41,095 bases of DNA. Origin: Guillardia theta CCMP2712. Taxonomy: Eukaryota > Protista > Cryptophyta. This document shows positions 6,387 to 33,830 of the stretch, in pieces. Each line of letters opens with the position of its first letter. Positions within the stretch are counted from its first letter, which is position 1. A model generated the notes under the pieces. It saw only the letters and a list, made by a program, of their open reading frames with translations, made no database searches and was not told the origin of the DNA. Both the position numbers and the translations under genes were made by a program. Location of the stretch: contig NW_005434527.1 in NCBI RefSeq assembly GCF_000315625.1, positions 113,729 through 154,823 on the forward strand, read 5' to 3'.

Positions 6387-8436
6387 ATGCTTCATCCGGA
6401 TACTCTCAAGACGGTTGACTATGGTGTTGTGTTGGATAACATGGCAAAGTTCAAGATAGAGGACGGCTGGTCGATCTTGAGTTTACAAAGGGGTCAGGAA
6501 AGCGACAAGACAAAAGGGAGGTTCTTAGGAGAAGTGAGATATCAAACAACAAACTTGTTCGAGACTCCAGTCGCTCAGCTTGTGCCTGGACCTGCTCGTA
6601 GCTCTTCCACATCCGAACAGGTGGCATCCACAGGGAGCTCTTCCTCTGGGAGAAGGAGGAAGAAGATCTTCAAGCCCCATCCTGAGGTGGTTTTCAAGAA
6701 ATACGCCACCGTGATGAGTTGGAGGTGTCGTATGAGTGAAGTGAATGTGATGCAGGCGGATGCTGAGATCACCATGAATGCGATCAAGAAGTGTTTCGAT
6801 GAACTTCAGATCAACATCCCTGAGGCTCTGGTGTGTTGGTTTCTCATCCACTTGTTGGCGTTTGTGGTGATGATGGTGATGGTTGTGGCAGGTGGAAGAG
6901 AAGTTCAAATCACTGGATGTGAACAAGAATGGCGTGCTTGATTACAAGGAGTTCATGGCGATCTATCGCGAGGGAAATCATCTCGAACATGCAGACAAGA
7001 TGCTGCTGGAACTCACAGTGGAGAAGAGACTTCATCACCAGGCGATGGAAGCGATAGATGATTACCTCAAGCACCTCAAGTCGGGAGATGACACGAGGAC
7101 ATGGCTGGAAGAGCAGATGAGCTTCCATGACCTGGACTTGTTAGACGAAGGAGCGCACAAACTCTTGTGGACAGAATCGAAGCTGGTGCAGGGGCAGAAG
7201 CTCCATGCGAAGGTGAAGGAGAAGATTGTATCGGCATGGAAGGGAGTGAAGGGACAGATCTTCATGCTGCGATACGGTCACCTGATGAACAAGCGCAAGT
7301 CAGACAAGTCAAAGAACGAGCCGTGTATGAAGGGTTGGCTGTGCATTACAGACGAAGAGGACGCGCGCCCCAACCACGTCCAGTGGACCTCGAGGTATTT
7401 CGTGCTCAGGAAGAACCAGGACCTGCAGTGGTTCGTCGGAGAGAAAGAATTCCTCAAAAGTAATCGGTCGATTGGTAGGCTGGCTGTGTCAGGTCTGCCT
7501 TTCCCCCATTCCTCCTGTCTCCCCTTTTACTCTCCTCTCGCCTCCCTTCACTGTCTCCGCTTCCCCCTCCCCCCACCCCCGCCCTTGTTCCTGATTCCGG
7601 CCCCCTCCTCCTCGCGTCTTCCTTCTCTCTCCCCTCCTCTCGCGCTTTCCCTCTCGGCCCTTCATACTCGCTTCAGGTGCTGATCGATATCGCGTTTGTG
7701 TGTTTGCAGATTTCCAACTCTTCCACGAGTTCCCCCAGCTCAAAGGCAAAGGGAACGTGTTTGCGCTCAGGAGCCTCCCACCGCACGCGCAGACGGAGTG
7801 GGAGGAAGGAGACAACCGGCACAAGTGGATCTACTTTTCTGCTGGCACTTCACGGCTGCGGGAGAAATGGACCAGCGCGATCACTAAAGGTGTCTCCCCC
7901 CAGCCCCTCCTAGCCGCTTCCCTCTTCACTTCAGCTCCACCCTCGTCCCTTCCTTCGAGTTTCGCCGTCTTCGTCCTGGGCTCCTGCTGTTCTTCTCTGA
8001 GTCGCTGACTTTTCGAGCAGTACAGAAGTCAGGGGAGGGAGGAGTGAGGGCGCAGCTTGCTCTCATGCAAGGAACAGTCCTCGACTTCCTCATTGCTCAC
8101 GGCGCCGACGTCAACGTGGAGGACGAGTTCGGTTGCACTGCTCTGCATCTCGCAGCAGACGAAGGGGTGAGCCAGACCGCTGCTCTTCCTCCTCCTCCTC
8201 CCTTTCTCTCTTGATCGCCTGCTCCACTCCCCTCCCTCCTCGCATCGGCTTCTTGTCCTGCCTCCAATGACCGTGGGTCGTAGTACGCCAAGGGGGTACA
8301 GGAGCTCCTCAAGATCCCCACGCTGAAGCTGGATGCTCTTTCGAGGCGAGGACTGACAGCAGAGGAGAGCGCGACACAGCACGGGAACCAAACGATCGCT
8401 CAGATGATCCATCACGCTGCTAAGATGCGCCGGTAA
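6387..8436 (+). CDS. EF-hand + PH domain + ankyrin-repeat protein (true start probably upstream)
   Basis: EF-hand DVNKNGVLDYKEF; PH domain MKGWL...WTSRYFVLR...LQWF...NVFAL...IYFSAGTSRLREKWTSAI; ankyrin [35 protein letters not shown]. Introns ~6830-6891, ~7493-7709, ~7890-8020 and ~8167-8283; stop TAA at 8434-8436. Confidence 0.8.
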
Positions 8437-13700: not shown

Positions 13701-13908
13701 CTGATGATCATGTGATCTCATATCGGATGATCATTGAGATCAAGTCCGACTGATATCGCTAGGGGGGCAAACTTGATGCAGACCCGCCTCAGAGGGAAGC
13801 GACCTCCACCATGGGCGAGGGACTGTGGGAGCAGGGGAACGATGGCACGAGGGGAGCGAGAGGAAGAGGATGAGAGGAGGAGGGAGAGAGATTCGTGCTG
13901 ACGACTCC

Positions 13909-16900
13909 ATGTCCAAGATCCTGCGTCCCGCAGCCACGCTCTTCCTCCTCCTCTCCTCTCTGAGTCAGGCTGGCACCGCCGTCCCACGAAACGCGCGCGA
14001 AGTTGTGGTTAACAGTGCTTCTTTCGCATCTGACGAGACAGACAAGCCCCTTGACTTTAGCCTGCCAGAGGCAGCACGCAGCATGACAGGAGAACAGCTG
14101 TACTTCATCGGTGAGAAGCTCCTGCTGGAGGGAAGAGCGTCAGAAGCTGTGGCATTCCTGTCCAAGGCTGCATCGCTAATGCCGAGAGACGCCTTCACGC
14201 ACAGCAACCTGGCGATCAGCCTCCATCAGCTGGGGAGGTCGAAGCAAGCGATCCCTCACTTCAAGATGGCTGCCAGCACCCAGCTCGACTCCTTGTACTT
14301 CGCCAACCTCGGGCAAGCGCTGTGGAGTGTCGGGGAGATTGAGGAGGCGATCCGGGTGCTGGAGACGACCATGCGGCTCGATGAGAATCAGTTCGGGTCC
14401 TTAGCTCTCCTGCTCCAGGTGCTCCATGCTCCTCCTGCCCCTGCCCCTCTACCTCCTGTCATGCTGTCACTTCTCGTGCTGCTCGTCCCTGTTCTCGGCC
14501 TGTCTCGTGTTCCTCCTGCTCCTCTCACATGGCCCTGCTCCTTCCCTCCCCTCCCCTCCTTACCTACGTATCCTCTTGCCGCTCTGACCAACTCTAGCTG
14601 GAGCACTACACGGCCTCCATCCTCTCCTCCTGGAACCGCAACTACGCTAGAGCGCGACGAGCTCTTCACGTCGTCCTTGGCAAAGCTGAAGTGTCGGGCA
14701 ATCCGGCAGACACGGTCTGGACGCCGTCACAGGTGAAGGAAGGGGGGAGGGTAGAGGAGGGAGGAGGGATGGGGAAGGGGGTGGTAGGAGGGTAGAGGAG
14801 GGAGGAAGGAGCAGGAAGGGGTTGGTAGGAGGGAAGAGAAGGGAGGAGGGTAGAGGAGGGAGGAAGGAGCAGGAAGGAGATGGTAGGAGGGTAGAGGAGG
14901 GATGGAGAAGGGTGGACAGGGGAGATGCCATTGTCTGAAGATTTTCGTGGTTTCAAGATTTTGCTTCTGGATGTTGATGAGGAATACGTTCTCAAGCTTT
15001 GCCGCATCCATACGAACAGAAATCTGCAGCCATCTCTTCATCGTTTCCGATATGGTACGACATGCTAGTCTTGTATGTACGCATTGAGGTCCTGGATGAG
15101 ATGTTCATTCCTCGCACACTCTGCATTCTAATCTCATGTAATGAAAGTGACCTTACATCTCCGTTTTCATGTTTTTACCTCACCTTTCATCAACTCAGAT
15201 TCTCTTGTCTCTTCTCTCTTCTCATGTTATTCTGCCCCCACCTCTGCTCTGCTCTTCTCTCTTCTCCTCCTCTTTGTTTCCTGACCTGCATGCCAGTCAG
15301 ACCGTCTGGAAAGAAAAGGCTAAGAGTTGGGTCACCTTACCGCTCTGCCCTTGCGGGAGCTGCTGACTTGTCTTCAGGTACCTGAGCTACAGCTTCGGCC
15401 TCGGAGTTCGCAACGGGCTCATGTACCATGTAAGCTTGCGACGAGGAGGGGAGGAAGAGCGTTAGTGATGAACCTTTAGGTTTTCGGGTCGCACAACCGA
15501 AGTCAAGTCGAGGTTGTCAAGAATCAGCCGGCGCAGGCTGCTGAGATTTGCACGTCAGATCTTTGGGTTTGCTATCAGACCGCACGACGACAATGCTGAC
15601 GATGCGGAGAAAGCGAGGGTGGAGAAGAACGTGAGAGGAGAGGCTCTTCCTTCCTTGGAGTTGTTGAGACTCCTTCAATCTAACAGGTCGAGCACTTCGT
15701 CGACATTAGTAGGATCGAAGTGTCCGACATCCCTGCCCTCATCAACTCCAACAACGTCCACGTCCTCGTCGACATCTGCGGCCTACACGCCAACGGCACC
15801 ATGCTCTACAAGAGGTGAGATCAGTCGATCCTGTCGGGACATGTTTGACTCTCGTCCCGCTCGTCTCCTCATGTCAGTCTGCTCGCCTTCAAGCCCTCGG
15901 CCGTTCAAGTTGCCTACATGGCCTTCGCCGCAACCACCGGAGCATCTTACATAGACCACCTTGTTACCGACAAAGTGACCCCCTCATGCCCATCGGCTGA
16001 ATGATTCCCAGTCCCCGCTTCCTCCTCCCCCTCCTCGTCCTCGTTTTCCTCCTCCTCCCACTCCTCCTTCCCCTCCTCCCGCTTCGTCCTCGTCCTCCTC
16101 GTCCTCCTTGCCCTCCTCCTCCCACTCCATCCTTGTCCTGCTCCTCGTCCTCATCTTCCTTCCCTCCCGCTCGCCTCCTTCTCCTCCCTTTTCCTTATCT
16201 GTTCCTCTTGTTTTATTTATTTCAGTGCCTTCAGACCTTCTTCTCTAGTTGACTTTCAGTGTATCAGATCACAAGTCCGCCAGATTATCGTCATCACTAC
16301 TCGGAGTCCTTCATCTACATGCCCAACTCGTATCATGTCAACTCCCACAAGTACTTTGCTCTTCATCTTTCATCGTGGGTTGCAATCTGTTCTGCTGGCT
16401 GACATGTCTTGTAACGTCCTCCTCTTCTGCCATCCCATCACATTACTGTTGTCTTCTCTGTTCAGGCAACGATTCAAGACAAACGTCTTCGGTACATTCC
16501 CTCCCTCTCCTCATGAGTAGCTCAAACTCTGGAGCAGGAGAGAAGGAGCTTGTGGGCAGGAGGAGCAAGGAAGGACTCCCCAACTCTTCTATCATCTACT
16601 GCAGGCAAGGAGAAGGGAGGGATGTGACGACGACGAGGAGGAGCAGGAGGAGGAGAAGGGGAAAGAGGAGGATGAGCACGACGAAGAAGAGGAGGGAGAG
16701 GAGGAGGAGGAAAGTAATGCTGTTTCAGCTACAACCAATTCTTCAAGATAGACAAGCACATCCTACGAGCATGGATCGATATCCTTCGACGAGATGAAAA
16801 GGTTCTCAAACTTTTCTCTTCATTTTGGCCCTTGAAAGGTTTGAGCCAGTCTGTCCTCGTGCTCGTAAAGTTCTTGTTTCACAAGCAGGTTGCAGGAAAA

Positions 16901-18513: not shown

Positions 18514-20717
18514 TCATCTGCGGTCGATGAGCTGCCGTAGAACGATCGGCGCTGCCATTTGCAGCAAATCGAGCGAAGGATCCAACTCCCTTCCGACCCC
18601 ATCGAGGACCTGCGAGCAAGTCAAACATGAGAGGAGGACGAGGAAGGGGCACCATGACAGCCAGGCAGACGGCAGCGAAGTTGCTCTCGATCTTCACGCG
18701 ATGCAGACAAGCCTGACAGAGGATGAGCGATGAGCACGCGGCAGTGAAAACGTACAAGAGTGAAGGCCTGAGCCAGAATCTGCCCAGCACGGAACTTGCC
18801 GAGCACCAGACCTCTTCCTAGCGCGTCATTGACGAGCCGCTCTGCGAGAAGAGTCACAAGGAGCGACACTGAGAGCGCAAGAGGAGGAGGCAAGAGGAGC
18901 AGCGGACGAGATCAGAGCATAGGGCGGTTCCTACCCATCCCGTCGCAGAAGGCCTCGACGTTGTCACATGCGTGATCCCTCGCGTTCTCCAGCATGAGCT
19001 GAGCAGCCAGTCGACCGTCTCGCTGCACGACAGCTCCGAACAGTGCAACGAAGTTCTTCTTGTCTCGATCCTGAAACCAAGTCACCTTGTGCTCCCTTGG
19101 CACGTCTCATAGCTCACCGACAGCTGGGAGGTGATGCCGGCATCGAGGAAACTCACTCTGATGGGCCCGTTGTTGTCCTCTCCGAACGATACGAGGACGT
19201 TGCCAGGATGTAGATCCCCGTGAATGAAGTTGTGCTGTTCGAGCAGTCAGACACTGCGTACACTCATGTCCTCTCACCTTGAAGCACATGGCAAGAAACG
19301 CCCTCATGCCGATGTCTGCGACTTTCCTCCTGATGTCAGTCTGGTCCGACAGGTTCCCTGCTCGCAAGCATCAGTCGCACGTCGCACGGCAGGCAGCCGA
19401 GTTCACCTGAGATCAGCTCGGCCAGAGGAATTCCGTCCTGAAGAGTCTCCACTAGGATGTTCTCCGATACCAAGGGCCGGATTGGCAGAGGGAATTTCAC
19501 CTCCTCCCACGATTTGAAATTCTGAGAGAACATTTCGAGGTTGTTGGCCTCAACCCTCAGGTCTATCTGGTTCTGCATCAGACCTGCGAATTCCTCAACG
19601 CTTTCTCTCAGAGACAACCAGCGCAGCCGCGGCAGTTTCTCCACCAAAGTGGCCAGGCTCAGCATCAGGTGAATGTCAGCGTACGACGTCGAAGGAACTT
19701 CGGGGTGGATGATCTTGATCGCTACTTTCATGGGCTCGTCGTCCTTCATGATCACTGCCCGATGTACCTGCGCAATGCAGCCTGAGCCGATCGGCGTCTT
19801 GTCCAGCGACAGGAGCTGATATCCCGAGTTTCGCATCAAGAGGAGCAGGTCGTCCAGCGAGCTCTCGATGTCATGCGTCTGCGCGTTCGAATGCAGGATG
19901 GAGAGTCTGCTGCAGAGATCCTGCGGGAAAATATCCGTGCGAGTTGCCGCCCACTGACCGAGCTTGACAAACGCCGGGCCGCTCCTCTCCAGCTCTGCGA
20001 TGGCCCACCGCCACCACAAGTCGAGGGCTGAACCTCCCAGGAGACGGAAAGGGAGGTAAGAAACAGCGAGAGGAAAGAAGATGAAGATGTGTCGAAAAAT
20101 CCTCTGCACCATCAAGTTGACGCTGATCTCTCGTTCAACCCTGCAAAACCATCATTCACACAACCTTCTCGCAAGACAGGTTCTCACCATAATTGATTGC
20201 TACTCATCCCCGTGTTGTCCAGAACTGGCACAGTGAGCTCGGCGACCGAGTTCTCCTTGCTAACCAGCCAAGGTAGGCTTGCATGTCTTCCTTGCATCCT
20301 CTTGATTGTCAGCCCAAGTCCCGTCATGCCAATAGCAAACGTCGTACAACCCACACAAACTCGACCAAATTTTGACTTCCAAAACAAGTAGAATCTGATC
20401 AGCGCGTTTGTTGGGACCTCAACAACTGCTGACCGATGAATATAATGAGCTCGACCTCCCTGACCCCCATACCTTGCTCGTTTCCCCGAAAGAATATGCA
20501 TCCCCCTCCGTTGTAGAAACGTCACCTGAAACTCCCACACCAACGGCTGAGTTCGCCTGAGTTCAGATTTCCCATGATCCGCCGCAAACCACATGTGTTT
20601 GGTAGTCAACCCTTCTACATGGCTGCTAACAATGTTCCTTGCAGGTGTTTTGACCGCACCTTTGGCCGCAGCCATGAACAAAGCCTTCTTGGTGAGATTT
20701 GCCATCATACTGGCCAT
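18514..20717 (-). CDS. ABC1/UbiB atypical kinase, ADCK2-like, probably mitochondrial
   Basis: SGPAFVKLGQWAATRTDIFP (KxGQ), PIGSGCIAQVHRA, VAIKIIHP, QIDLRVEANNL, HNFIHGDLHPGNVLV, FLDAGI, HRVKIESNF and VLDGVGRELDP; basic N-terminal presequence. Confidence 0.88.
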
Positions 20718-25250: not shown

Positions 25251-27328
25251 TCACTGCGGGGTGGTGAGCCCAGCCTTAACCTTCCTCTCCATATCCTTGG
25301 TCAATTTCTTCTTATACTCGAGGATGTCTCCCTTCCACACCTCAACCTTCTTGTTCTCGCACAACCAAACCTCCTTAGCCACCTTGCCGATCAACCTGAA
25401 ATCGTGCGACACCAGCACCATGCCTCCCGCGAACTCGTTGATCGCGTCCGCCAGCGAGTCGATCGACTCCATGTCAAGATGGTTGGTTGGCTCATCAAGG
25501 AAGAGGATGTGCGGATTGCACTCGGCGATATAGGCGAAGACGAGGCGAGACTTCTGTCCGTCCGACATGTACTTGATCTTCGCTGTCTGCATCTCACCGG
25601 AGACTCCGAACCTCCCGACGCGACTTCTCCATGCCTCGAGCTCCAGGTTCTTCTCAGGGAACTGAGAGTTCATGTACTCCAGAGGCGTCATGTCCTCGTC
25701 CAGCTGATCCACCGAGTGCTGATGGAACTTGGCGATCTTAAGATGCGAATGTTTCTTCACGTCTCCCCTGGTGGGGCTCAGCTCCCCGTACATCAGCTTC
25801 AGCAGCGTACTCTTTCCTGCTCCGTTGGGACCGATGAGAGCGATGCGAGAGTCGAGATCCACAGAGAGCTCCAGGTGCTTGTAGAGCATGTCCTCTTCTT
25901 TGCCACTGTACGCAAAGGAGACATCGTTGATCGCGAGGACGGGAGGAGGGATCGATCCGCAGTCAGGGAAATGAAACTTGATGCTGCGATCATTCTCAGG
26001 TTTCTCGGTGAGTCCAGCCTCCATCATCTTGTCAATAATCTTCTGCTTCGACTGAGCCTGCTTCACCAAATTGGCATATGTACCACAGGATGCGATGAAT
26101 TCTTTCAAGTGCTTGATGTCCGCCTGCTCCTTCTCATAGCGCTTCATCTGATTGACATCATTCTCCCTCTTTGTCTTGACAAAAGAATCGTAGTTTCCTC
26201 CGTAGTAGACGAACTTTCTCTTAGACGTCAAGTGAATGATGTGGGAGCAAACTCCATTCAAGAAATCTTCCGAGTGAGAGACAAGAACAAGAATTCCAGG
26301 ATACTTTGCCAAGTAGCTCTCCAACCAGCAGCAGGACTCCATATCCAAATGGTTCGTGGGCTCGTCCAGGAGAAGAAGCACAGGCTGCAATAGCAGAGCA
26401 CGGCCAAGTGACACTCGCATACGCCATCCTCCGGACAGATCTCGAGTTTTCTTCTGGAGGAAAGCGTGCGAGAAACCCAAACCAATGAGAATCTCGGTCG
26501 CGCGGACTTCAAAGGTAGACGGATCCATACGATCGATGCGCTCGTAGATGTCCTGTGCACAAGGGTAAGGGTAAGGGAAAGGGAAAGGGAAAGGGAAAGG
26601 GCGGGGGCGGGGGCAAGAGGCGGGGGCAAGAGGCGAGGGGAAGAGGGAGCGCGAGGAGTTACCTGGAGGATCTCTGCTTCAGGCCCGTGGCTCTCAAGAA
26701 CCATCTCAGCGAGTTTCTCCAACTTCTCCACCTTCTCTCTGACAACGTCCACCACAGCCTCCACAGCAGTTCTCTCGCTGGGCTCAGCTTCTTCCTCGAG
26801 GTGGTAAATATCAATGTGGTCGGGGATCGGAAGCTCTCTAGAGGCCAGGGCAGTCAGGAAAGTAGACTTCCCGGACCCGTTTGAACCGATGAGACCATAG
26901 CGGTTTCCGTACGAGAGCTCCAGAGTGGTGTCCTCGATCAAGCGCTTGCCGTACAGCTGTAGAGAGAAGGAGATGATCTTCAAATCCCTTGAGAGAGGGT
27001 TCGATCCAAGCTCTCCTGTTCAACCACTTTGTGTCAGCCTTGAGCTGCGACAAGCCGTCGCCTCCTACACACACACGAGCAAACACACAGCACCCCAAGC
27101 TAATACATAGCCTCGACAGCACGTACCAGTAACATTTCTGGCAGCAGCAGCTTCTTTGTTTGCGACGGACTTGGAGACAGTCGAAGTGCTCAAGTTCTTC
27201 AAGGCAGCGGCAGCATCTTCAGCTCCAGCATCCCCTTCGTTCTCTTTGTCCTCCTTGCCAGCCTTCTTCTTCTCCTGCTTCTCCTGGCGCTTCTGCTTTG
27301 CGCTCTTCTTCGGTTCTTCTTTGCCCAT
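25251..27328 (-). CDS. ABCF2: ABC-F translation factor, ABCF2/Arb1-like
   Basis: Three exons (introns 27016..27126 and 26553..26662). Two ABC domains: GSNGSGKST/LSGGWRMR/LLLDEPTNHLD and GPNGAGKST/MSDGQKSR/FLDEPTNHLD. No TM segments; K-rich N-terminus; RNVTG-ELGSNPLSRDLKI matches the ABCF2-type lead-in. Confidence 0.93.
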
Positions 27329-28483: not shown

Positions 28484-28549
28484 GAGAAGCTGATATCAGC
28501 GGGGGAGGTGGAGGTAGAGAAGCTGATATCAGCGAGGGAGGTGGAGGTA
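28484..28549. repeat. 2 x 33-bp direct repeat, each copy containing the palindrome GCTGATATCAGC
   Basis: GAGAAGCTGATATCAGCG(G/A)GGGAGGTGGAGGTA occurs twice. Confidence 0.9.
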
Positions 28550-30097
28550 GCGAAGGCGAAGCTGGAAAAGACACCGTGATGCGAGCAAGAGGGCTCTGGC
28601 TCGCATGTATTGGGTTTATCTGAACTTCCCGCACATATTGCATGGAAATAACGTCGGCATTTCTTATTATCATACATGGCAAGTAGAGAGATGTTCTTGT
28701 TTGAATTTGCATTGCGATGTTTCCTGAAACAAGCATGATGGGGCTTGAGGTCCATCTGCATTGCCACCAAAGTTTTTGACTCTGGACCATGTTCGAGTGA
28801 AAATCTATCATTGTCTTAGAGAACATTCTCTGAGGCAGACTTGAAACTTCTAATAAACAACTAGTATGATGGGGGCAGTGTCAGTGTGACACCATCATTG
28901 CTACACAGCCGTGCGGTGTATGGTGCCGTCATAGACAATATGTAGAGACAAGACTTTCCAACTTGACTCTCAACCGGGGCTTCAAGGGTCATGGTACCCG
29001 CCCCGTTGGAATCCAATGTGACAAATAAACAATTTATGTTTTCCAAGTTCTGGATCATGTAATGCTGGCCAATCTTTTTGAAACTGCTGCTTTTTGCACA
29101 AAGTTAAGTTTTTTACATGTGAAACAATGAATCTTAGTTGTCATCTTTCTCCAAGATCTCAGGGCGAGCTCTGATTGCAAGTTCTGCCAATGATTTCAAA
29201 TAAAGAAAGCCTTAAACTTTCTTGATCACTGTGAGCATCATTTCAGTTGTGTGCTCCCCGTCATCTCCGACTACAACTCTTTCCCAGGTCAGTACAATAC
29301 ACTCTTGGACTCACGGCCAAGCGTACGGTTCAAGTAGAGTTCTACTTCAGCTATACTTTGTGCCGAGGTTTAGAGTTCCTTCTTCTCCATCTCTTGTTCA
29401 TGTCGCATCATACAGCCCCCCCCCCCCCCCCTCGTGCATTCCGAGTCTCTTCATACCTGGGGAGTCAAATCTTTAAAAATAGCACAAAAGGCCTTAAACC
29501 ACACCTTTTCAGAAATGACTCTTCCTTCCAATCGGCATAATGGGACTACCCTACCACATGTTTTATGACATACCCTACCCCCAATCACCATTTCAAAGGC
29601 AAATACACACAATCATTACCCCTGTCACAGGCGTGTACTACCCTACCTCCTGTATATGCACGCGGCTTTTCATTCCAATCGCCGCCGGCTAAAAGCGATC
29701 TAAAAATACCCTCCAAGGTGGACCCACCCGTACATATCATAGGTTTTCCATGGGTCCGTCAAGGGGTTTACAAGTACTGATTATATGACTTTCTTGAATC
29801 CCTCCGACTGGTCGCTCGAATCCGTTTGCCCGTGCTCGCCTTCAACTTGTACACTTCTGCCCTCCCCTCTTGTCGCTCCTCCTCCTCCTCCTCCTCCTCC
29901 TCTTCCTCCTCCTCCTCATCCTCCAACATCTTTGACGGGACCCAGACGACCAAGAAACAATTCAAAATTCTGTCGTCACTCCATTCCCACCCCCCTCGCG
30001 TCCTGATCCCCCCTTCTCCGATCTTTCTCCCACCTCCTGTGCTCACTTAGACTTCCCCGATTCAGATAAACAGCAGAATTCCTCCCTTCCTACCTCG

Positions 30098-31012
30098 ATG
30101 TCTCAGAGCAATATCACCCTCGACCAGCTCAGCCACTACTTCCACCTCCCAGAGAAGCAGGTTGCACAGGAGCTCGGTATCTGCCTCACCTCCCTCAAGA
30201 AAATCTGCCGCGCTCGAGGCGTCATGCGCTGGCCCTTCAGGAAGCTCCGCCGCCTCCAGCGNNNNNNNNNNNNNNNNNNNNNNNNNNNNNNNNNNNNNNN
30301 NNNNNNNNNNNNNNNNNNNNNNNNNNNNNNNNNNNNNNNNNNNNNNNNNNNNNNNNNNNNNNNNNNNNNNNNNNNNNNNNNNNNNNNNNNNNNNNNNNNN
30401 NNNNNGACGCAGGCGTCGTGCGAGCCTGCGGAGGCAGAGCAGCAGGTCGAAGGCTCCTTGTCGGACCTCTGGCCCACGTGCACCATCAGCGGGGCGCACA
30501 TGCATCAGCTTATCGTACACAACTGGAGCTCCTTGTGGACTGTCCACCAGATGCGGCGGCGGCTGCTGACGGCGCTGGGAGGCAAGGATCTGACCATCTC
30601 CCCGGACGGCATCAGGGCGTACCTGGTCTACACCAGCTCACTTGCGGCCATGCAGGCGAAGGCAGTGTGCGAGCAGGCGTGCGAGCTACTGCGGGAGCGG
30701 GCGGGGAGCGCCGGGGAGGCGAGAGGGGCGTCGCTGGAGGAGGCCGCGAAGGCGGCAGAGGCGGCTTCGGAGCCACAGCAGCCGATGACGTTGATGTCGA
30801 TGGTGGAGCCGGGGGCAGGGCTGGAGCTTGAGGGCTTTCTGGCGCAAACTCCGAGTAAGCCTTTGAGTGGGGAAGAGTTCGATGGCATGGGACATCATGA
30901 CGAAGAGCCTTCAGAATTCAGTCATTTTGTGTCCCCGCCGGAAACGAGCTTGACCTCGAATCTGTTTGACCCGGTCTCCCATCCTTGTGGTTTCAGTTTT
31001 CAATTCTTGTAA
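30098..31012 (+). CDS. RWP-RK transcription factor, copy A (apparently intronless, contains assembly gap)
   Basis: ITLDQLSHYFHLPEKQVAQELGICLTSLKKICRARGVMRWPFRKL is the RWP-RK signature. Confidence 0.9.
   Translation: MSQSNITLDQLSHYFHLPEKQVAQELGICLTSLKKICRARGVMRWPFRKLRRLQXXXXXXXXXXXXXXXXXXXXXXXXXXXXXXXXXXXXXXXXXXXXXXXXXTQASCEPAEAEQQVEGSLSDLWPTCTISGAHMHQLIVHNWSSLWTVHQMRRRLLTALGGKDLTISPDGIRAYLVYTSSLAAMQAKAVCEQACELLRERAGSAGEARGASLEEAAKAAEAASEPQQPMTLMSMVEPGAGLELEGFLAQTPSKPLSGEEFDGMGHHDEEPSEFSHFVSPPETSLTSNLFDPVSHPCGFSFQFL
30262..30405. other. Assembly gap (144 N)
   Basis: Run of n. Confidence 1.
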
Positions 31013-31412
31013 ATGTAGTGTGTTTTTATACAATTATTAGCCTTGTTTGACTTGAAATTAAAACGAAATGTGATATTCAACGCTTCTTTTCATCCCGCTC
31101 GATTTACTTGCAGTCATTTCACTAGTTGCATATTACTGCTTTGATTCTTGAAGCGCTGGAATAGGCGGCATATGGCATACACGTTCTCTTTCCATCTTGA
31201 AGTTCTGATTTTCAGAATTGCTATTAATAAAGGACAATCCGACAAACTTCATGGCAACCCCGAAAAGCGTCTCGCTTACCAAGCTGTGACCTCTCGATTT
31301 GACAATATCATGTGAAAACACTCGTGTGAGATATCTCGAACACTTTCTTTGCATGTCTTTATTTATTGAATCACACTCAAAACAACCTATATACAAAACT
31401 CGTTCAATCTTC

Positions 31413-32348
31413 TTAGACGCTGACGAGATGGGAATTGCAAAGTCCTCCACTGGCTGGACCAGAAAGAAAATGCATTTCCTCAAGAAAGCAGGAAGACAGG
31501 GGCTGGCTTGAAGGAGGGGTACACAGGAACTGGCACTCTTCCTTCTTTCCTTCGGCTTCCTTGTCCTCAACGGACCACCAGCAGGCATGGCTTGATGTCT
31601 GCGCCAGAAAGCCCTCAAGCTCCAGCCCTGCCCCCGGCTCCACCATCGACATCAACGTCATCGGCTGCTGTGGCTCCGAAGCCGCCTCTGCCGCCTTCGC
31701 GGCCTCCTCCAGCGACGCCCCTCTCGCCTCCCCGGCGCTCCCCGCCCGCTCCCGCAGTAGCTCGCACGCCTGCTCGCACACTGCCTTCGCCTGCATGGCC
31801 GCAAGTGAGCTGGTGTAGACCAGGTACGCCCTGATGCCGTCCGGGGAGATGGTCAGATCCTTGCCTCCCAGCGCCGTCAGCAGCCGCCGCCGCATCTGGT
31901 GGACAGTCCACAAGGAGCTCCAGTTGTGTACGATAAGCTGATGCATGTGCGCCCCGCTGATGGTGCACGTGGGCCAGAGGTCCGACAAGGAGCCTTCGAC
32001 CTGCTGCTCTGCCTCCGCAGGCTCGCACGACGCCTGCGTCGAGCCGTGCACGGACGGGACCGGAGACCCGGACTGGCACGACGGGGACCTGTCGATGGCC
32101 TCGGCCATAGGGACTGGGGAGAGATCGCGGCCCGAGGTCATGATCGAGAGCGAGTCGGTGTCATTGCCGACCTTCTTGAGGGTGCGCTGGAGGCGGCGGA
32201 GCTTCCTGAAGGGCCAGCGCATGACGCCTCGAGCGCGGCAGATTTTCTTGAGGGAGGTGAGGCAGATACCGAGCTCCTGTGCAACCTGCTTCTCTGGGAG
32301 GTGGAAGTAGTGGCTGAGCTGGTCGAGGGTGATATTGCTCTGAGACAT
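31413..32348 (-). CDS. RWP-RK transcription factor, copy B (intronless ORF, 311 aa)
   Basis: Same N-terminal 250 aa as copy A wherever A is readable; different 61-aa tail. Confidence 0.92.
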   Translation of the reverse strand: MSQSNITLDQLSHYFHLPEKQVAQELGICLTSLKKICRARGVMRWPFRKLRRLQRTLKKVGNDTDSLSIMTSGRDLSPVPMAEAIDRSPSCQSGSPVPSVHGSTQASCEPAEAEQQVEGSLSDLWPTCTISGAHMHQLIVHNWSSLWTVHQMRRRLLTALGGKDLTISPDGIRAYLVYTSSLAAMQAKAVCEQACELLRERAGSAGEARGASLEEAAKAAEAASEPQQPMTLMSMVEPGAGLELEGFLAQTSSHACWWSVEDKEAEGKKEECQFLCTPPSSQPLSSCFLEEMHFLSGPASGGLCNSHLVSV

Positions 32349-32823
32349 CGAGGTAGGAAGGGAGGAGTGGCGAGGGGGGAGAGGCGGCGCGTGGAGGAAG
32401 GGGAGGGGGGGGAGGGGAATTGAGCCTTGGTCGGTGGGGAGACGTTATGAGCACAGGGAGTTTTATCAACAGGATGGGGGCAATACCACCGGTACTTTTG
32501 ACTGACAATACAGTGATCAGACATGGTAGGGTCATAAAGGAGGTTATTTTTAGGGTGTTTTTTGTCTTTGACGATTCGATTGAAACGACGTCCGAGTGTA
32601 GGGGGTAGGGTGGTGAAGTTTTGGTTCGTGACGTTCTTTTGTACCATGACCTGCATATATTCGGGGTCATGGGGTAGTATTGTCAATGTTTTCTATCAGG
32701 GTGGGTGGTTTACTGACACCGATTGGAACGAAGAGTCAATGGACGTGAGATTTCGAAAAGAGATGTTTTCAGAATTATGATCGTTAAAGATCATAACCTA
32801 GTTGATGGCTTGGCGTTGCTAAG

Positions 32824-33830
32824 TTAGCGAACTAAGCCCCATGGCTGACTCCAACATGAGAGCGAGAGGAAGCTTTGGGAAGTGTTGGGACCTGAATGTT
32901 GGGTCCGGGAGTGGAAGAAGAAGAGGCGAGGGAAACGATAGTGTGGAAGATCTTTGCGTTTTAACTGTGCTTGCATGCGCATTGCAGACCGTGCCATGAC
33001 ACTTGGACTCAGGTGTACAGTTTTTCTCGCTAGTGAAAGTTTCTGTGTGATCTTCGATTGTCTTGCATCTGTGATGTCGACTCTCTTTTGTTTGTGAAGA
33101 CCTTGCTTAGCATGACTGAGGTTGACAAAAGAGGGTACGCATTTTCCTATCTGTGCCTTTTTTATAAGGCAACCTTGTAGAGTCGGGGAGATCACTAGGA
33201 AAATCACTGCTACCTTTATGACAGGTCACTAGGACAATTAAAGCTGCTGTTAATAGAACACAATAAGCAGGGCAATCTCCTACTCCTTGCTGGAGCATGG
33301 AGCTCGTGCATGGTCATGTGTGTCTCTGGGTGCGGTGAGCTCCGCTTGGTCTGGTATACCACGCTCACAGAGTCAGAGTGTCGCCTATGTACTTCAGGCC
33401 TCATACCTCTCTACCTCGCATCGAAATAATTGATTCGCCGAAGCAGCCTCTCTCTCTCAAGGTTTTCAATCCATTGATTAGACTGTACAATATCAAAAGG
33501 TTGGTTGTAACACTACAAGCAGCAGATGACGCTTGTTTACCTGTTGACCGAACACGAATCGCTGTTAAGCATTTCTCAACCCACTTGGGGGCTGGAGGCC
33601 AGAAGCCTCGAAGACAAGCTCGCAATCCTCTCGAGTAGAACCTTCCTGGTCCCTATCTGGGTTTGTGCTGGGAACCTCTAAGTCTCTGTCAGCTTAAAGG
33701 ACAGTAGTGATATCTCCTATCGCTTCAGAGGGCGGAAAGAGGAGAGATCGACTAAGATCGACGTCGGATCTATCCTCAAGAGGAGAGCGTCTTTGCAAAG
33801 GCTGATGATGGTCACGATGGGGAAGATCAT
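32824..33830 (-). CDS. Possible small multi-exon hypothetical gene
   Basis: Intron-like GTAAAC...GTACAG followed by the open exon SNQWIENLERERLLRRINYFDAR and further short GT-AG segments; no complete model could be built. Confidence 0.25.

What the first reader, a model, noticed from the sequence alone, without database searches (positions are those of the whole stretch)
30080..32366. Inverted RWP-RK pair with identical arms but different promoters and tails: candidate tail-swapping (flip-flop) cassette
Seen: two convergent RWP-RK genes share a 767-bp inverted arm (18 bp upstream of the ATG plus ~250 codons), identical wherever readable. Outside the arm, each has its own upstream region and its own C-terminal tail (54 vs 61 aa), and both tails lie in the 753-bp spacer. 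Geometry: one crossover between the arms would invert the spacer and exchange which tail and 3'UTR follow which promoter, with both ORFs staying intact. Established: RWP-RK proteins include the volvocine mating-type determinant MID and plant RKD gamete regulators, and inverted-repeat flip-flop switches mating type in methylotrophic yeasts (Ogataea, Komagataella). Inference: this could be a recombinational switch for a life-cycle or sex regulator. No recombinase is visible, and a static duplication is at least as likely.
Basis: partly seen in the sequence, partly recalled or inferred. Interest (0 to 1): 0.82.

Follow-up and report, generated by a model that had tools for sequence, protein, structure and literature searches.

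The report
Palindromic RWP-RK gene pair, homogenised arms
Two convergent copies of a cryptophyte RWP-RK transcription-factor gene share a real, identical 767-bp inverted repeat kept alike by gene conversion; both are expressed with different tails, this genome holds many such pairs, and nothing shows that the piece between them flips as a switch.

Summary
The arms 30080-30846 and 31600-32366 are identical wherever they can be read. The spacer is 753 bp, and the two ORFs are 304 and 311 aa with 54- and 61-aa tails.

The 144-N gap has exactly the length of the other arm's counterpart (48 codons). A transcript-derived protein and two relatives' contigs cross it without an indel. An independent DNA run gives one unbranched arm unitig at about twice the spacer depth, and all four junctions are present. 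So the duplication is real, not an assembly artefact.

Both tails are transcribed in sense, each with its own 3' end. Tail A weakly resembles the family's C-terminus; tail B does not. The arms have GC3 0.86 and the tails 0.52-0.54. The arms differ by 2.2% from a relative's arm but by 0% from each other, which indicates arm-to-arm gene conversion.

The genome has at least 146 RWP-RK matches. Eight of ten sampled opposite-strand neighbour pairs are also inverted repeats of 90-100% identity. The scan has flagged such pairs at other loci of this genome before.

Flipping could not be tested, because contigs cannot phase across 767 identical bases. One relative's contig joins promoter B to tail A, the swapped arrangement, but it may be a chimeric assembly path. 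No recombinase domain was found among the window's large ORFs. This is an ordinary palindromic paralogue pair. A regulated switch is unsupported.

The parts
29925..30079 (+). U_A: unique upstream region of gene A (promoter and 5' leader), with a (CCT)n tract just upstream at about 29866-29920
   Evidence: No similarity to U_B. The U_A/arm junction is covered by X2 record 2 and, in a relative, by X7 record 10.
30080..30846 (+). Arm A: 18 bp of leader plus codons 1-250 of gene A. It contains the 144-N gap at 30262-30405.
   Evidence: 100% identical to arm B where readable. Gap continuity is shown.
30098..31012 (+). Gene A coding sequence, 304 aa: RWP-RK domain, disordered linker, ferredoxin-like domain, disordered tail A. 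No intron.
   Evidence: P0078 from a transcriptome is identical in full. Pfam hit, model.
30847..31012 (+). Tail A (54 codons), the family-type C-terminus
   Evidence: Conserved in relative P0001/L005 (92.8% at DNA level, 5 synonymous and 5 non-synonymous codon changes). It scores 6.9 bits against the family C-terminal profile, reached by 7 of 500 shuffles. Sense RNA reads reach depth 16.
31013..31412 (.). AT-rich non-coding middle of the spacer (GC 0.37), holding both 3' UTRs. A's transcripts end near 31050-31120 and B's near 31330-31400.
   Evidence: X23 depth falls to 0 between 31125 and 31324 on both strands. GC value.
31413..31599 (-). Tail B (61 codons plus stop), not detectably related to the family C-terminus
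   Evidence: Scores 0.7 bits, reached by 251 of 500 shuffles. No Pfam hit. No relatives found with P0076:170-311. Transcribed in sense at depth up to 5.6. The exact protein P0076 is in NCBI and MMETSP.
31413..32348 (-). Gene B coding sequence, 311 aa
31600..32366 (-). Arm B, fully read
   Evidence: X2 record 4 covers 31600-32366 as one unitig at depth 121.3.
32367..32470 (-). U_B: unique upstream region of gene B, pyrimidine-rich on the sense strand
   Evidence: Homologous to L005 positions 1-89 (81% identity, against 69.5% for U_A). The arm/U_B junction is covered by X2 record 5.

Best explanation
This is a real palindromic (convergent) pair of paralogous genes for a cryptophyte-specific RWP-RK transcription factor. 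The protein has an N-terminal RWP-RK domain, a disordered linker, a ferredoxin-like (RRM/ACT-like) domain and a disordered tail.

The first 250 codons plus 18 bp of leader are kept identical by arm-to-arm (intrachromosomal, probably GC-biased) gene conversion. The conversion tract ends where homology ends, so each copy keeps its own promoter and its own C-terminal tail. Gene A keeps the family-type tail. Gene B reads into unrelated spacer sequence and has a new tail. Both are transcribed and end separately in the AT-rich middle of the spacer.

The cell therefore makes two proteins with the same DNA-binding and middle domains, but from different promoters and with different C-termini. The locus is one instance of a genome-wide habit of the expanded RWP-RK family, which forms inverted and tandem local duplicates that are homogenised. 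On cellular timescales it is a static arrangement.

Shown: the structure, its reality in independent DNA, expression of both tails, the compositional break, and recurrence elsewhere in the genome. Inferred: gene conversion as the cause of identity, and that tail B is a new tail.
For: Structure.

Reality: in independent DNA run X2 the unitigs break at the arm ends, the arm has depth 121.3 against 54.1 for the spacer, and all four junctions are present.

Gap continuity.

Expression: X23 sense reads lie on tail A (30725-31124, depth up to 16) and on tail B (31325-31624, up to 5.6), with none in between and no splice joints. Exact full-length proteins for both genes are in a transcriptome collection.

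Concerted evolution:
- The window's arms are 100% alike, but the arm differs by 2.2% from L005's arm. Tail A differs by 7.2% and the non-coding spacer by 11%.
- Relative X7 (contigs 95-99% alike) has U_A/arm, arm/tail A and tail B/arm junctions at the same places. Its contigs end there and its arm depth is higher, so the repeat appears older than that split.
- At 32280/30166 X2 carries the relatives' base across an unbranched double-depth arm unitig, where the reference has the other base in both arms.

Composition: GC3 is 0.82-0.90 along the arm and 0.52-0.54 in both tails. The single-copy paralogue on C32 has 0.48-0.70.

Tails: tail A matches the family C-terminal profile (7 of 500 shuffles reach its score). 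Tail B does not (251 of 500).

Recurrence: there are at least 146 RWP-RK matches in the genome. Eight of ten sampled opposite-strand neighbour pairs are inverted repeats of 90-100% identity, and some have different N- or C-terminal ends (C121, C3).

Context: the neighbours are ABC-F, ABC1 kinase, TPR and EF-hand genes, with no recombinase domain in the large ORFs scanned.
Against: - Phase across the arms was not observed in any data set, so a mixture of two spacer orientations is not excluded.
- L005 joins a U_B-type upstream region to tail A. If that is a true contig, the spacer has inverted at least once between lineages.
- The presence of the repeat in X7 rests on short contigs. The tail B/arm overlap is only 26-29 nt, and the sample is a metagenome that may hold more than one strain.
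- The X2 single-base difference could be allelic or between-copy variation hidden by contig building.
- High GC3 in the arms could reflect codon bias of the conserved domains instead of biased conversion. The paralogue's tail is also GC3-poor (0.40).
- The data on whether tail B is under selection are too few: two third-position changes in X7, and three non-synonymous against one synonymous in the 19 codons that L005 covers.
Confidence: 0.7

Rival explanations
1. Evolutionary or occasional flip/flop. Crossovers that accompany arm-to-arm conversion invert the 753-bp spacer now and then, so lineages or cells differ in which promoter drives which tail. No dedicated recombinase or regulation is involved. 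This does not exclude the best explanation; it adds to it.
For: L005, from a relative, has U_B-type upstream sequence (81% identity to U_B against 69.5% to U_A), then the arm, tail A and the spacer, with an intact 304-aa ORF. That is the swapped arrangement. Identical 767-bp inverted arms are a substrate for homologous recombination. The Saccharomyces chromosome XIV flip/flop region shows the same logic: homogenised inverted paralogues and recurrent re-inversion (PMC9731477).
Against: L005 is a 1562-nt k127 metagenome contig that ends inside unique sequence on both sides, which suggests low coverage. A de Bruijn path through identical arms cannot be phased and would be chimeric about half the time. 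No second relative spanning a whole arm was found. The reference and X2 are consistent with one orientation, but their contigs cannot exclude the other.
Confidence: 0.2
2. Regulated recombinational switch. Inversion is induced, as in Ogataea mating-type switching, and changes the cell's life-cycle or mating state by exchanging tails and 3' UTRs between promoters.
For: Only the geometry and the general link of some RWP-RK proteins to gamete or mating-type control (own knowledge; PMC4086717 was listed but not read in detail).
Against: There are many equivalent RWP-RK inverted pairs in the same genome. No recombinase, silencing context or mating-type-like neighbourhood was seen. Both tails are expressed in the same RNA sample. 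Tail B shows no conservation signal.
Confidence: 0.03
3. Very recent segmental inverted duplication of exactly 767 bp, with no ongoing gene conversion. The arms are identical simply because they are young.
For: Sharp boundaries with no residual homology outside the arms. Tail B looks like read-through into unrelated DNA.
Against: Relative X7, whose contigs are 95-99% alike to the window, shows the same junctions. GC3 of the arms (0.86) is far above that of the paralogue and the tails, which needs time.
Confidence: 0.06
4. Assembly artefact: a single gene folded back by the assembler around a gap.
For: There is an N gap inside arm A, and its length matches exactly. The public gene model for A is truncated to 120 aa (P0077).
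Against: X2, a separate 2021 DNA data set, has both outer junctions, both inner junctions and about double depth on the arm. Both tails are present in RNA.
Confidence: 0.01

Closest known systems
Saccharomyces chromosome XIV flip/flop region flanked by homogenised inverted Centroid-family genes (Salzberg et al. 2022, PMC9731477)
   Same: Inverted paralogous genes are kept nearly identical within a genome by recurrent homogenisation. The intervening segment can invert by recombination between them. In that system the orientation is stable on laboratory timescales.
   Different: There the repeat is 4 kb, spans whole genes and flanks 24 kb holding 15 genes, and both orientations are documented. 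Here the repeat is 767 bp and ends inside the coding sequences, so an inversion would swap promoter and tail combinations. The spacer is 753 bp, and two orientations have not been shown.
Palindromes with arm-to-arm gene conversion, such as primate Y-chromosome palindromes (own knowledge: Rozen et al. 2003)
   Same: Inverted arms of about 100% identity carry expressed genes, show concerted evolution compared with orthologues, and have a unique spacer.
   Different: The scale is hundreds of bases here, not tens of kilobases or more. This is not known to be a sex chromosome. The arm boundary cuts the gene.
Ogataea/Komagataella flip-flop mating-type switching (PMC4238957, PMC5720833)
   Same: Inverted repeats flank an invertible segment that carries cell-type regulators.
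   Different: There inversion moves whole MAT genes into or out of centromeric or telomeric silencing, is induced by nitrogen starvation, and both isomers are seen in cultures. None of this is shown here, and here the repeats are the genes themselves.
RWP-RK transcription factors (PF02042; NLP, RKD and MID groups)
   Same: The RWP-RK domain is present at residues 5-52, well above the Pfam threshold.
   Different: This subfamily appears only among cryptophyte sequences in the hit list. It has a ferredoxin-like middle domain in place of a PB1 domain. No orthology to MID or RKD was established.

Membership tests
RWP-RK domain proteins (PF02042) | RWP-RK domain above Pfam's gathering score | tested here: met
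   76.5 bits against a cut-off of 29.3, residues 5-52, profile positions 1-48 of 49.
Palindromic gene pair under arm-to-arm gene conversion | Inverted arms near 100% identical, present in independent DNA at two-copy depth | tested here: met
   767 of 767 readable bases are identical. In X2 the arm unitig has depth 121.3 against 54.1 for the spacer, and the junctions are present.
Palindromic gene pair under arm-to-arm gene conversion | Arms more alike within a genome than orthologous arms are between lineages that share the repeat | tested here: inconclusive
   0% divergence within the genome against 2.2% to L005. X7 shares the junctions, but only on short metagenome contigs. Whether L005's organism has the repeat is unknown.
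Palindromic gene pair under arm-to-arm gene conversion | Compositional signature of biased conversion confined to the arms | tested here: met
   GC3 is 0.82-0.90 in the arms and 0.52-0.54 in the tails. The paralogue has 0.48-0.70. Other high-identity pairs average 0.72 against 0.61 for old pairs and singletons (rough).
Flip-flop (inversion) switch of the Ogataea type | Inverted repeats flanking the segment | tested here: met
Flip-flop (inversion) switch of the Ogataea type | Both orientations present in one strain, or inducible | not testable with these tools
   Only k-mer contigs and 60-nt RNA reads were available. No record bridges a whole arm by a single molecule.
Flip-flop (inversion) switch of the Ogataea type | Orientation decides which gene is expressed | tested here: not met
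   Both tails are transcribed in the same RNA sample and both proteins occur in a transcriptome set. Here an inversion would change promoter and tail pairing, not turn a gene on or off.
Mating-type or gamete RWP-RK regulators (MID, RKD) | Orthology to MID/RKD, or a sex-linked location | not tested
   Hits covering more than the RWP-RK domain are all cryptophyte sequences or unnamed. No phylogeny was made. The neighbours are housekeeping genes.

The most novel reading that the evidence does not exclude
The 753-bp spacer does invert by crossover between the homogenised arms, recurrently in evolution or at low frequency in cultures. L005 would then be a true flipped isomer. Because the repeat ends inside the coding sequences, each flip re-pairs two promoters with two different C-terminal tails and 3' UTRs of an otherwise identical transcription factor. 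That would be a form of recombinational isoform shuffling not described for RWP-RK genes, and possibly general to the many RWP-RK palindromes of this genome.
Probability: 0.2. Interest if true: 0.6.

Novelty: new member of a known kind. Interest (0 to 1): 0.33.

Why it matters
The work corrects a truncated public gene model: gene A is 304 aa, not 120. It shows that the gap hides nothing unusual. It also documents a clean case of concerted evolution that stops inside a coding sequence, giving two transcription factors that share their DNA-binding domain but differ in promoter and tail.

Together with the other RWP-RK palindromes, this points to local inverted duplication plus homogenisation as a major mode of growth of this family in Guillardia. 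If the spacer were shown to flip, the locus would be a compact natural example of promoter and tail re-pairing by inversion.

Tried and rejected
- Two scans of JGI metagenome contigs (protein patterns; a 29-nt conserved arm pattern) found no further relatives.
- Exact look-ups of P0078 and P0076 found no other contigs.
- A protein search with the last 142 residues of gene B, meant to catch fragments that carry tail B in relatives, found nothing. The length window limits what that blank means.
- The search for residual homology between U_A and U_B, and between the two tails, at DNA level was negative.
- The protein alignment suggested by eye that tail B also has the family's C-terminal motifs (TPPSS, LVSV). 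This did not survive a profile-against-shuffle test and was dropped.
The only background is the 41-kb window itself, which has no other repeat of 150 nt or more.
- Rfam found nothing at 29000-33500. Pfam found nothing for the middle domain or the tails.
- The fold search gave only middling matches (Z 6-7.4) to ACT and RRM domains, a common ferredoxin-like fold, so no function is claimed.
- X1's 2991-nt contig runs from the spacer through arm B into U_B. It was considered as evidence of phase and rejected, because it is a k-mer path at depth 6 in which the A-side junctions are simply not covered.
- The 30-nt loose end of X7 upstream of 30008 has no match in the window.
- The GTAAG at 30855-30859 was considered as a splice donor. 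RNA reads run through it without a joint, and the transcript protein equals the unspliced ORF.
Full report
**What is there.** The window is part of contig C147 of an 87.1-Mb, 669-contig genome. The protein hits place it in the cryptophyte Guillardia theta or a very near relative (GUITHDRAFT, Hanusia, Rhodomonas, Baffinella).

The repeat finder finds two perfectly complementary inverted blocks, 30406-30849/31597-32040 and 30080-30261/32185-32366. Only the N run interrupts them. A script shows that strict identity runs over 30080-30846 and 31600-32366, which is 767 bp. Position 30847 is the first difference. Neither the upstream regions nor the tails keep any DNA similarity beyond the arms.

Gene A (30098..31012, +, 304 aa) and gene B (31413..32348, -, 311 aa) are convergent. 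Each starts 18 bp inside its arm. They share 250 codons and end in 54- and 61-residue tails that lie in the 753-bp spacer. Gene B has an RWP-RK domain at residues 5-52 (E 1.5e-21).

**The gap.** The N run 30262-30405 is 144 nt. That is exactly the length of arm B's counterpart 32041-32184, and it is a multiple of three.

- A transcriptome-derived protein in the same 90% cluster, P0078 (304 aa), is gene A read through the gap, with the same 48 residues as gene B.
- The public genome model of gene A, P0077, is only 120 aa and starts after the gap, which is an annotation casualty of the gap.
- Two relatives cross the gap without an indel. One is metagenome contig L005. The other is X7 record 10, which the read tool reports as a joint from 30261 to 32184 on opposite strands with no letters between.
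- In DNA run X2 the arm is one unbranched 767-nt unitig, so no second version of this stretch is visible there.

The gap therefore hides the same 144 bases, in frame.

**Real or artefact.** X2 is a 2021 DNA data set. It is separate from the 2011 runs (X1) that probably fed the assembly. Its contigs break exactly where an inverted repeat predicts:

| Contig | Coordinates | Depth |
|---|---|---|
| U_A plus 30 nt of arm | 29925-30109 | 32.7 |
| Spacer plus 30 nt of each arm | 30817-31629 | 54.1 |
| Arm alone | 31600-32366 | 121.3 |
| 30 nt of arm plus U_B | 32337-32412 | 19.3 |

The arm has 2.2 times the spacer's depth. The duplication is real. It is the only copy pair of this arm in the genome and the only repeat of 150 nt or more in the window.

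**Expression.** Raw RNA reads of X23 are a 3'-biased library of 60-nt first mates. They lie on the + strand over 30725-31124 (depth up to 16) and on the - strand over 31325-31624 (up to 5.6). Between 31125 and 31324 there are essentially none (depth 0.18 at most), and there are no splice joints.

The simplest reading is that the first mate is sense in this library. Both genes would then give polyadenylated mRNAs with their own tails and short 3' UTRs, ending in the AT-rich (GC 0.37) middle of the spacer without overlapping. The opposite strand assignment would need transcripts that skip the spacer's middle. Exact full-length proteins for both genes also occur in a transcriptome collection. The ORFs equal the genomic translation, so the genes have no introns.

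**What the protein is.** An AlphaFold model built from a 16-sequence family alignment gives four parts:
- a helical RWP-RK region (residues 1-67)
- a disordered linker
- a confident beta-alpha-beta-beta-alpha domain at residues 122-205 (pLDDT 90-96)
- a disordered tail from about residue 225

The domain's best structural matches are ACT and RRM domains at Z 6-7.4, which is a common ferredoxin-like fold, so I draw no function from it. Pfam sees nothing there.

Hits that cover more than the RWP-RK domain are, where named, from cryptophytes. Within this genome only one other locus, on contig C32, shares the middle domain. The family's C-termini share a short proline-containing motif. A profile of these C-termini scores tail A at 6.9 bits, reached by 7 of 500 shuffles. 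It scores tail B at 0.7 bits, reached by 251 of 500. Tail A is therefore the ancestral type. Tail B is most simply a read-through into unrelated DNA.

**Why the arms are identical.** Against L005, a relative whose non-coding DNA differs by 11-19%, the divergence is as follows:

| Region | Divergence from L005 | Codon changes |
|---|---|---|
| Arm | 2.2% | 9 synonymous, 6 non-synonymous |
| Tail A | 7.2% | 5 synonymous, 5 non-synonymous |
| Non-coding spacer | 11% | n/a |

Within the window the arms differ by 0%.

X7 is a metagenome holding a relative whose contigs are 95-99% alike to the window. It has U_A joined to the arm, the arm joined to tail A, and tail B joined to the arm (26-29 nt of overlap). 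Its contigs end at the arm edges and its arm depth is higher. So the repeat seems to pre-date that split, yet the arms have not diverged within the reference. This is concerted evolution.

Composition agrees. GC3 is 0.82-0.90 all along the arm and drops to 0.52-0.54 in both tails. The single-copy paralogue has 0.48-0.70 over the same domains. This fits GC-biased gene conversion confined to the arms, although codon bias of the conserved domains contributes an unknown share.

At 32280 (equivalent to 30166 in arm A) X2's double-depth arm unitig carries the base that L005 and X7 have. The reference has the other base in both arms. Either a change was spread to both arms, or contig building hides variation between copies or alleles. 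In both cases the arms are at least 99.9% alike.

**The locus is not unique.** A six-frame search of the genome with the arm protein gives at least 146 RWP-RK matches, many of them in clusters. I fetched ten neighbour pairs on opposite strands. Eight are inverted repeats:

| Contig | Repeat |
|---|---|
| C89 | 593 nt at 98% |
| C121 | 390 nt at 97% |
| C1 | about 720 nt at 96-99% |
| C50 | nested, about 2.3 kb at 98-100% |
| C19 | about 1.2 kb at 97-99% |
| C3 | 94-100% |
| C52 | 90% |
| C2 | 94% |

In C121 and C3 the two proteins share an identical core but have different ends, the same pattern as here. Earlier notes of this scan on other pieces of the genome say the same. I checked the claim independently.

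Genes in the high-identity pairs have a somewhat higher GC3 (mean 0.72 against 0.61, rough, as some ORF calls are doubtful). The focal pair is a clean member of a genome-wide class, in a more conserved subfamily.

**Does it flip?** The geometry is right: a crossover in the arms would give U_A-arm-tail B and U_B-arm-tail A, both intact. No data within reach can phase 767 identical bases. Logan contigs are k-mer paths and the RNA reads are 60 nt. X1's contig, which runs from the spacer through arm B into U_B, is such a path at depth 6 and proves nothing.

There is one hint. L005's first 89 bases are homologous to U_B (81% identity) and not to U_A (69.5%, over a shorter and gappier alignment). 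Its downstream part is tail A, the spacer and the distal part of tail B. If L005 is faithful, then either its organism has the flipped isomer, or the ancestral single gene was U_B-arm-tail A and the reference arrangement arose by duplication plus one inversion. Either way the spacer inverted at least once.

But L005 is a 1562-nt k127 metagenome contig that stops in unique sequence on both sides, as low-coverage contigs do. If its organism has identical arms, the path through them is arbitrary. I put about even odds on it being chimeric. No further arm-spanning relative could be found.

Pfam found no recombinase or transposase domain in the 20 large ORFs scanned outside the locus. The identifiable neighbours are ABC-F, ABC1 kinase, TPR and EF-hand genes. 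Rfam finds nothing in the locus.

**Comparison with known systems.** The best analogue is the Saccharomyces chromosome XIV flip/flop region. There, inverted paralogous genes are continually homogenised and the segment between them re-inverts on evolutionary timescales, while staying stable in the laboratory (PMC9731477). Y-chromosome palindromes (own knowledge) are another analogue.

Ogataea's regulated flip-flop (PMC4238957, PMC5720833) shares only the inverted-repeat geometry. Its defining features are inducible inversion, both isomers in a culture, and expression set by a position effect. These are either untestable here or, for on/off expression, not met, since both genes are expressed together.

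What is particular here is that the homogenised tract ends inside the coding sequence. The pair therefore encodes two proteins with identical DNA-binding and middle domains but different promoters and tails.

**Verdict.**
- Observation: confirmed.
- Interpretation: the static, gene-converted palindromic pair is well supported (0.7).
- Occasional or evolutionary inversion: possible (about 0.2).
- Regulated switch: unsupported (about 0.03).
- Novelty: a new member of a known kind.
- Interest: modest, 0.33.

Noticed in passing
G000 contigs C89, C121, C1, C50, C19, C3, C52, C2 (loci L018-L023, L026, L027): The genome has at least 146 RWP-RK matches. Eight of ten sampled opposite-strand neighbour pairs are inverted repeats of 90-100% identity, including a nested palindrome of about 2.3 kb with two genes per arm on C50. 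Several same-strand tandem arrays are also seen (C33, C57, C86, C158, C430).
   Followed up: partly
window 30098-31012: The public protein model of gene A (P0077) is only 120 aa, because the model starts after the assembly gap. The transcriptome protein P0078 gives the full 304 aa.
   Followed up: yes
window 32383-32443: The G-rich tract upstream of gene B splits into several short, low-depth alternative contigs in DNA run X2. This may be length or base variation, or sequencing trouble in a homopurine run. Gene A has a (CCT)n tract at about 29866-29920, so both upstream regions are pyrimidine-rich on the sense strand.
   Followed up: no
run X7 (coded), laid on window 29925-32900: A sample labelled freshwater metagenome holds contigs 95-99% and over 99% alike to this Guillardia locus, possibly from two strains. 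At 30481-30530 one contig matches the reference and one is a variant. Upstream of 30008 its contig continues for 153 nt with sequence that has no match in the window.
   Followed up: partly
window 28484-28549: Two tandem copies of a 33-nt unit, 97% alike.
   Followed up: no
window 25251-26983 (-), 19336-20115 (-), 13825-14736 (+), 6883-7683 (+): The neighbouring ORF pieces carry ABC transporter ATPase domains of ABC-F type (ABC_tran plus ABC_tran_Xtn), an ABC1 atypical kinase domain, TPR repeats and a weak EF-hand. This is an ordinary housekeeping context with no mobile-element domains.
   Followed up: partly
P0078 residues 122-205 (window 30461-30712): A confidently modelled ferredoxin-like domain (pLDDT 90-96) is conserved in the cryptophyte members of this RWP-RK subfamily. 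It has no Pfam family. Structural matches to ACT and RRM domains reach only Z 6-7.4.
   Followed up: partly
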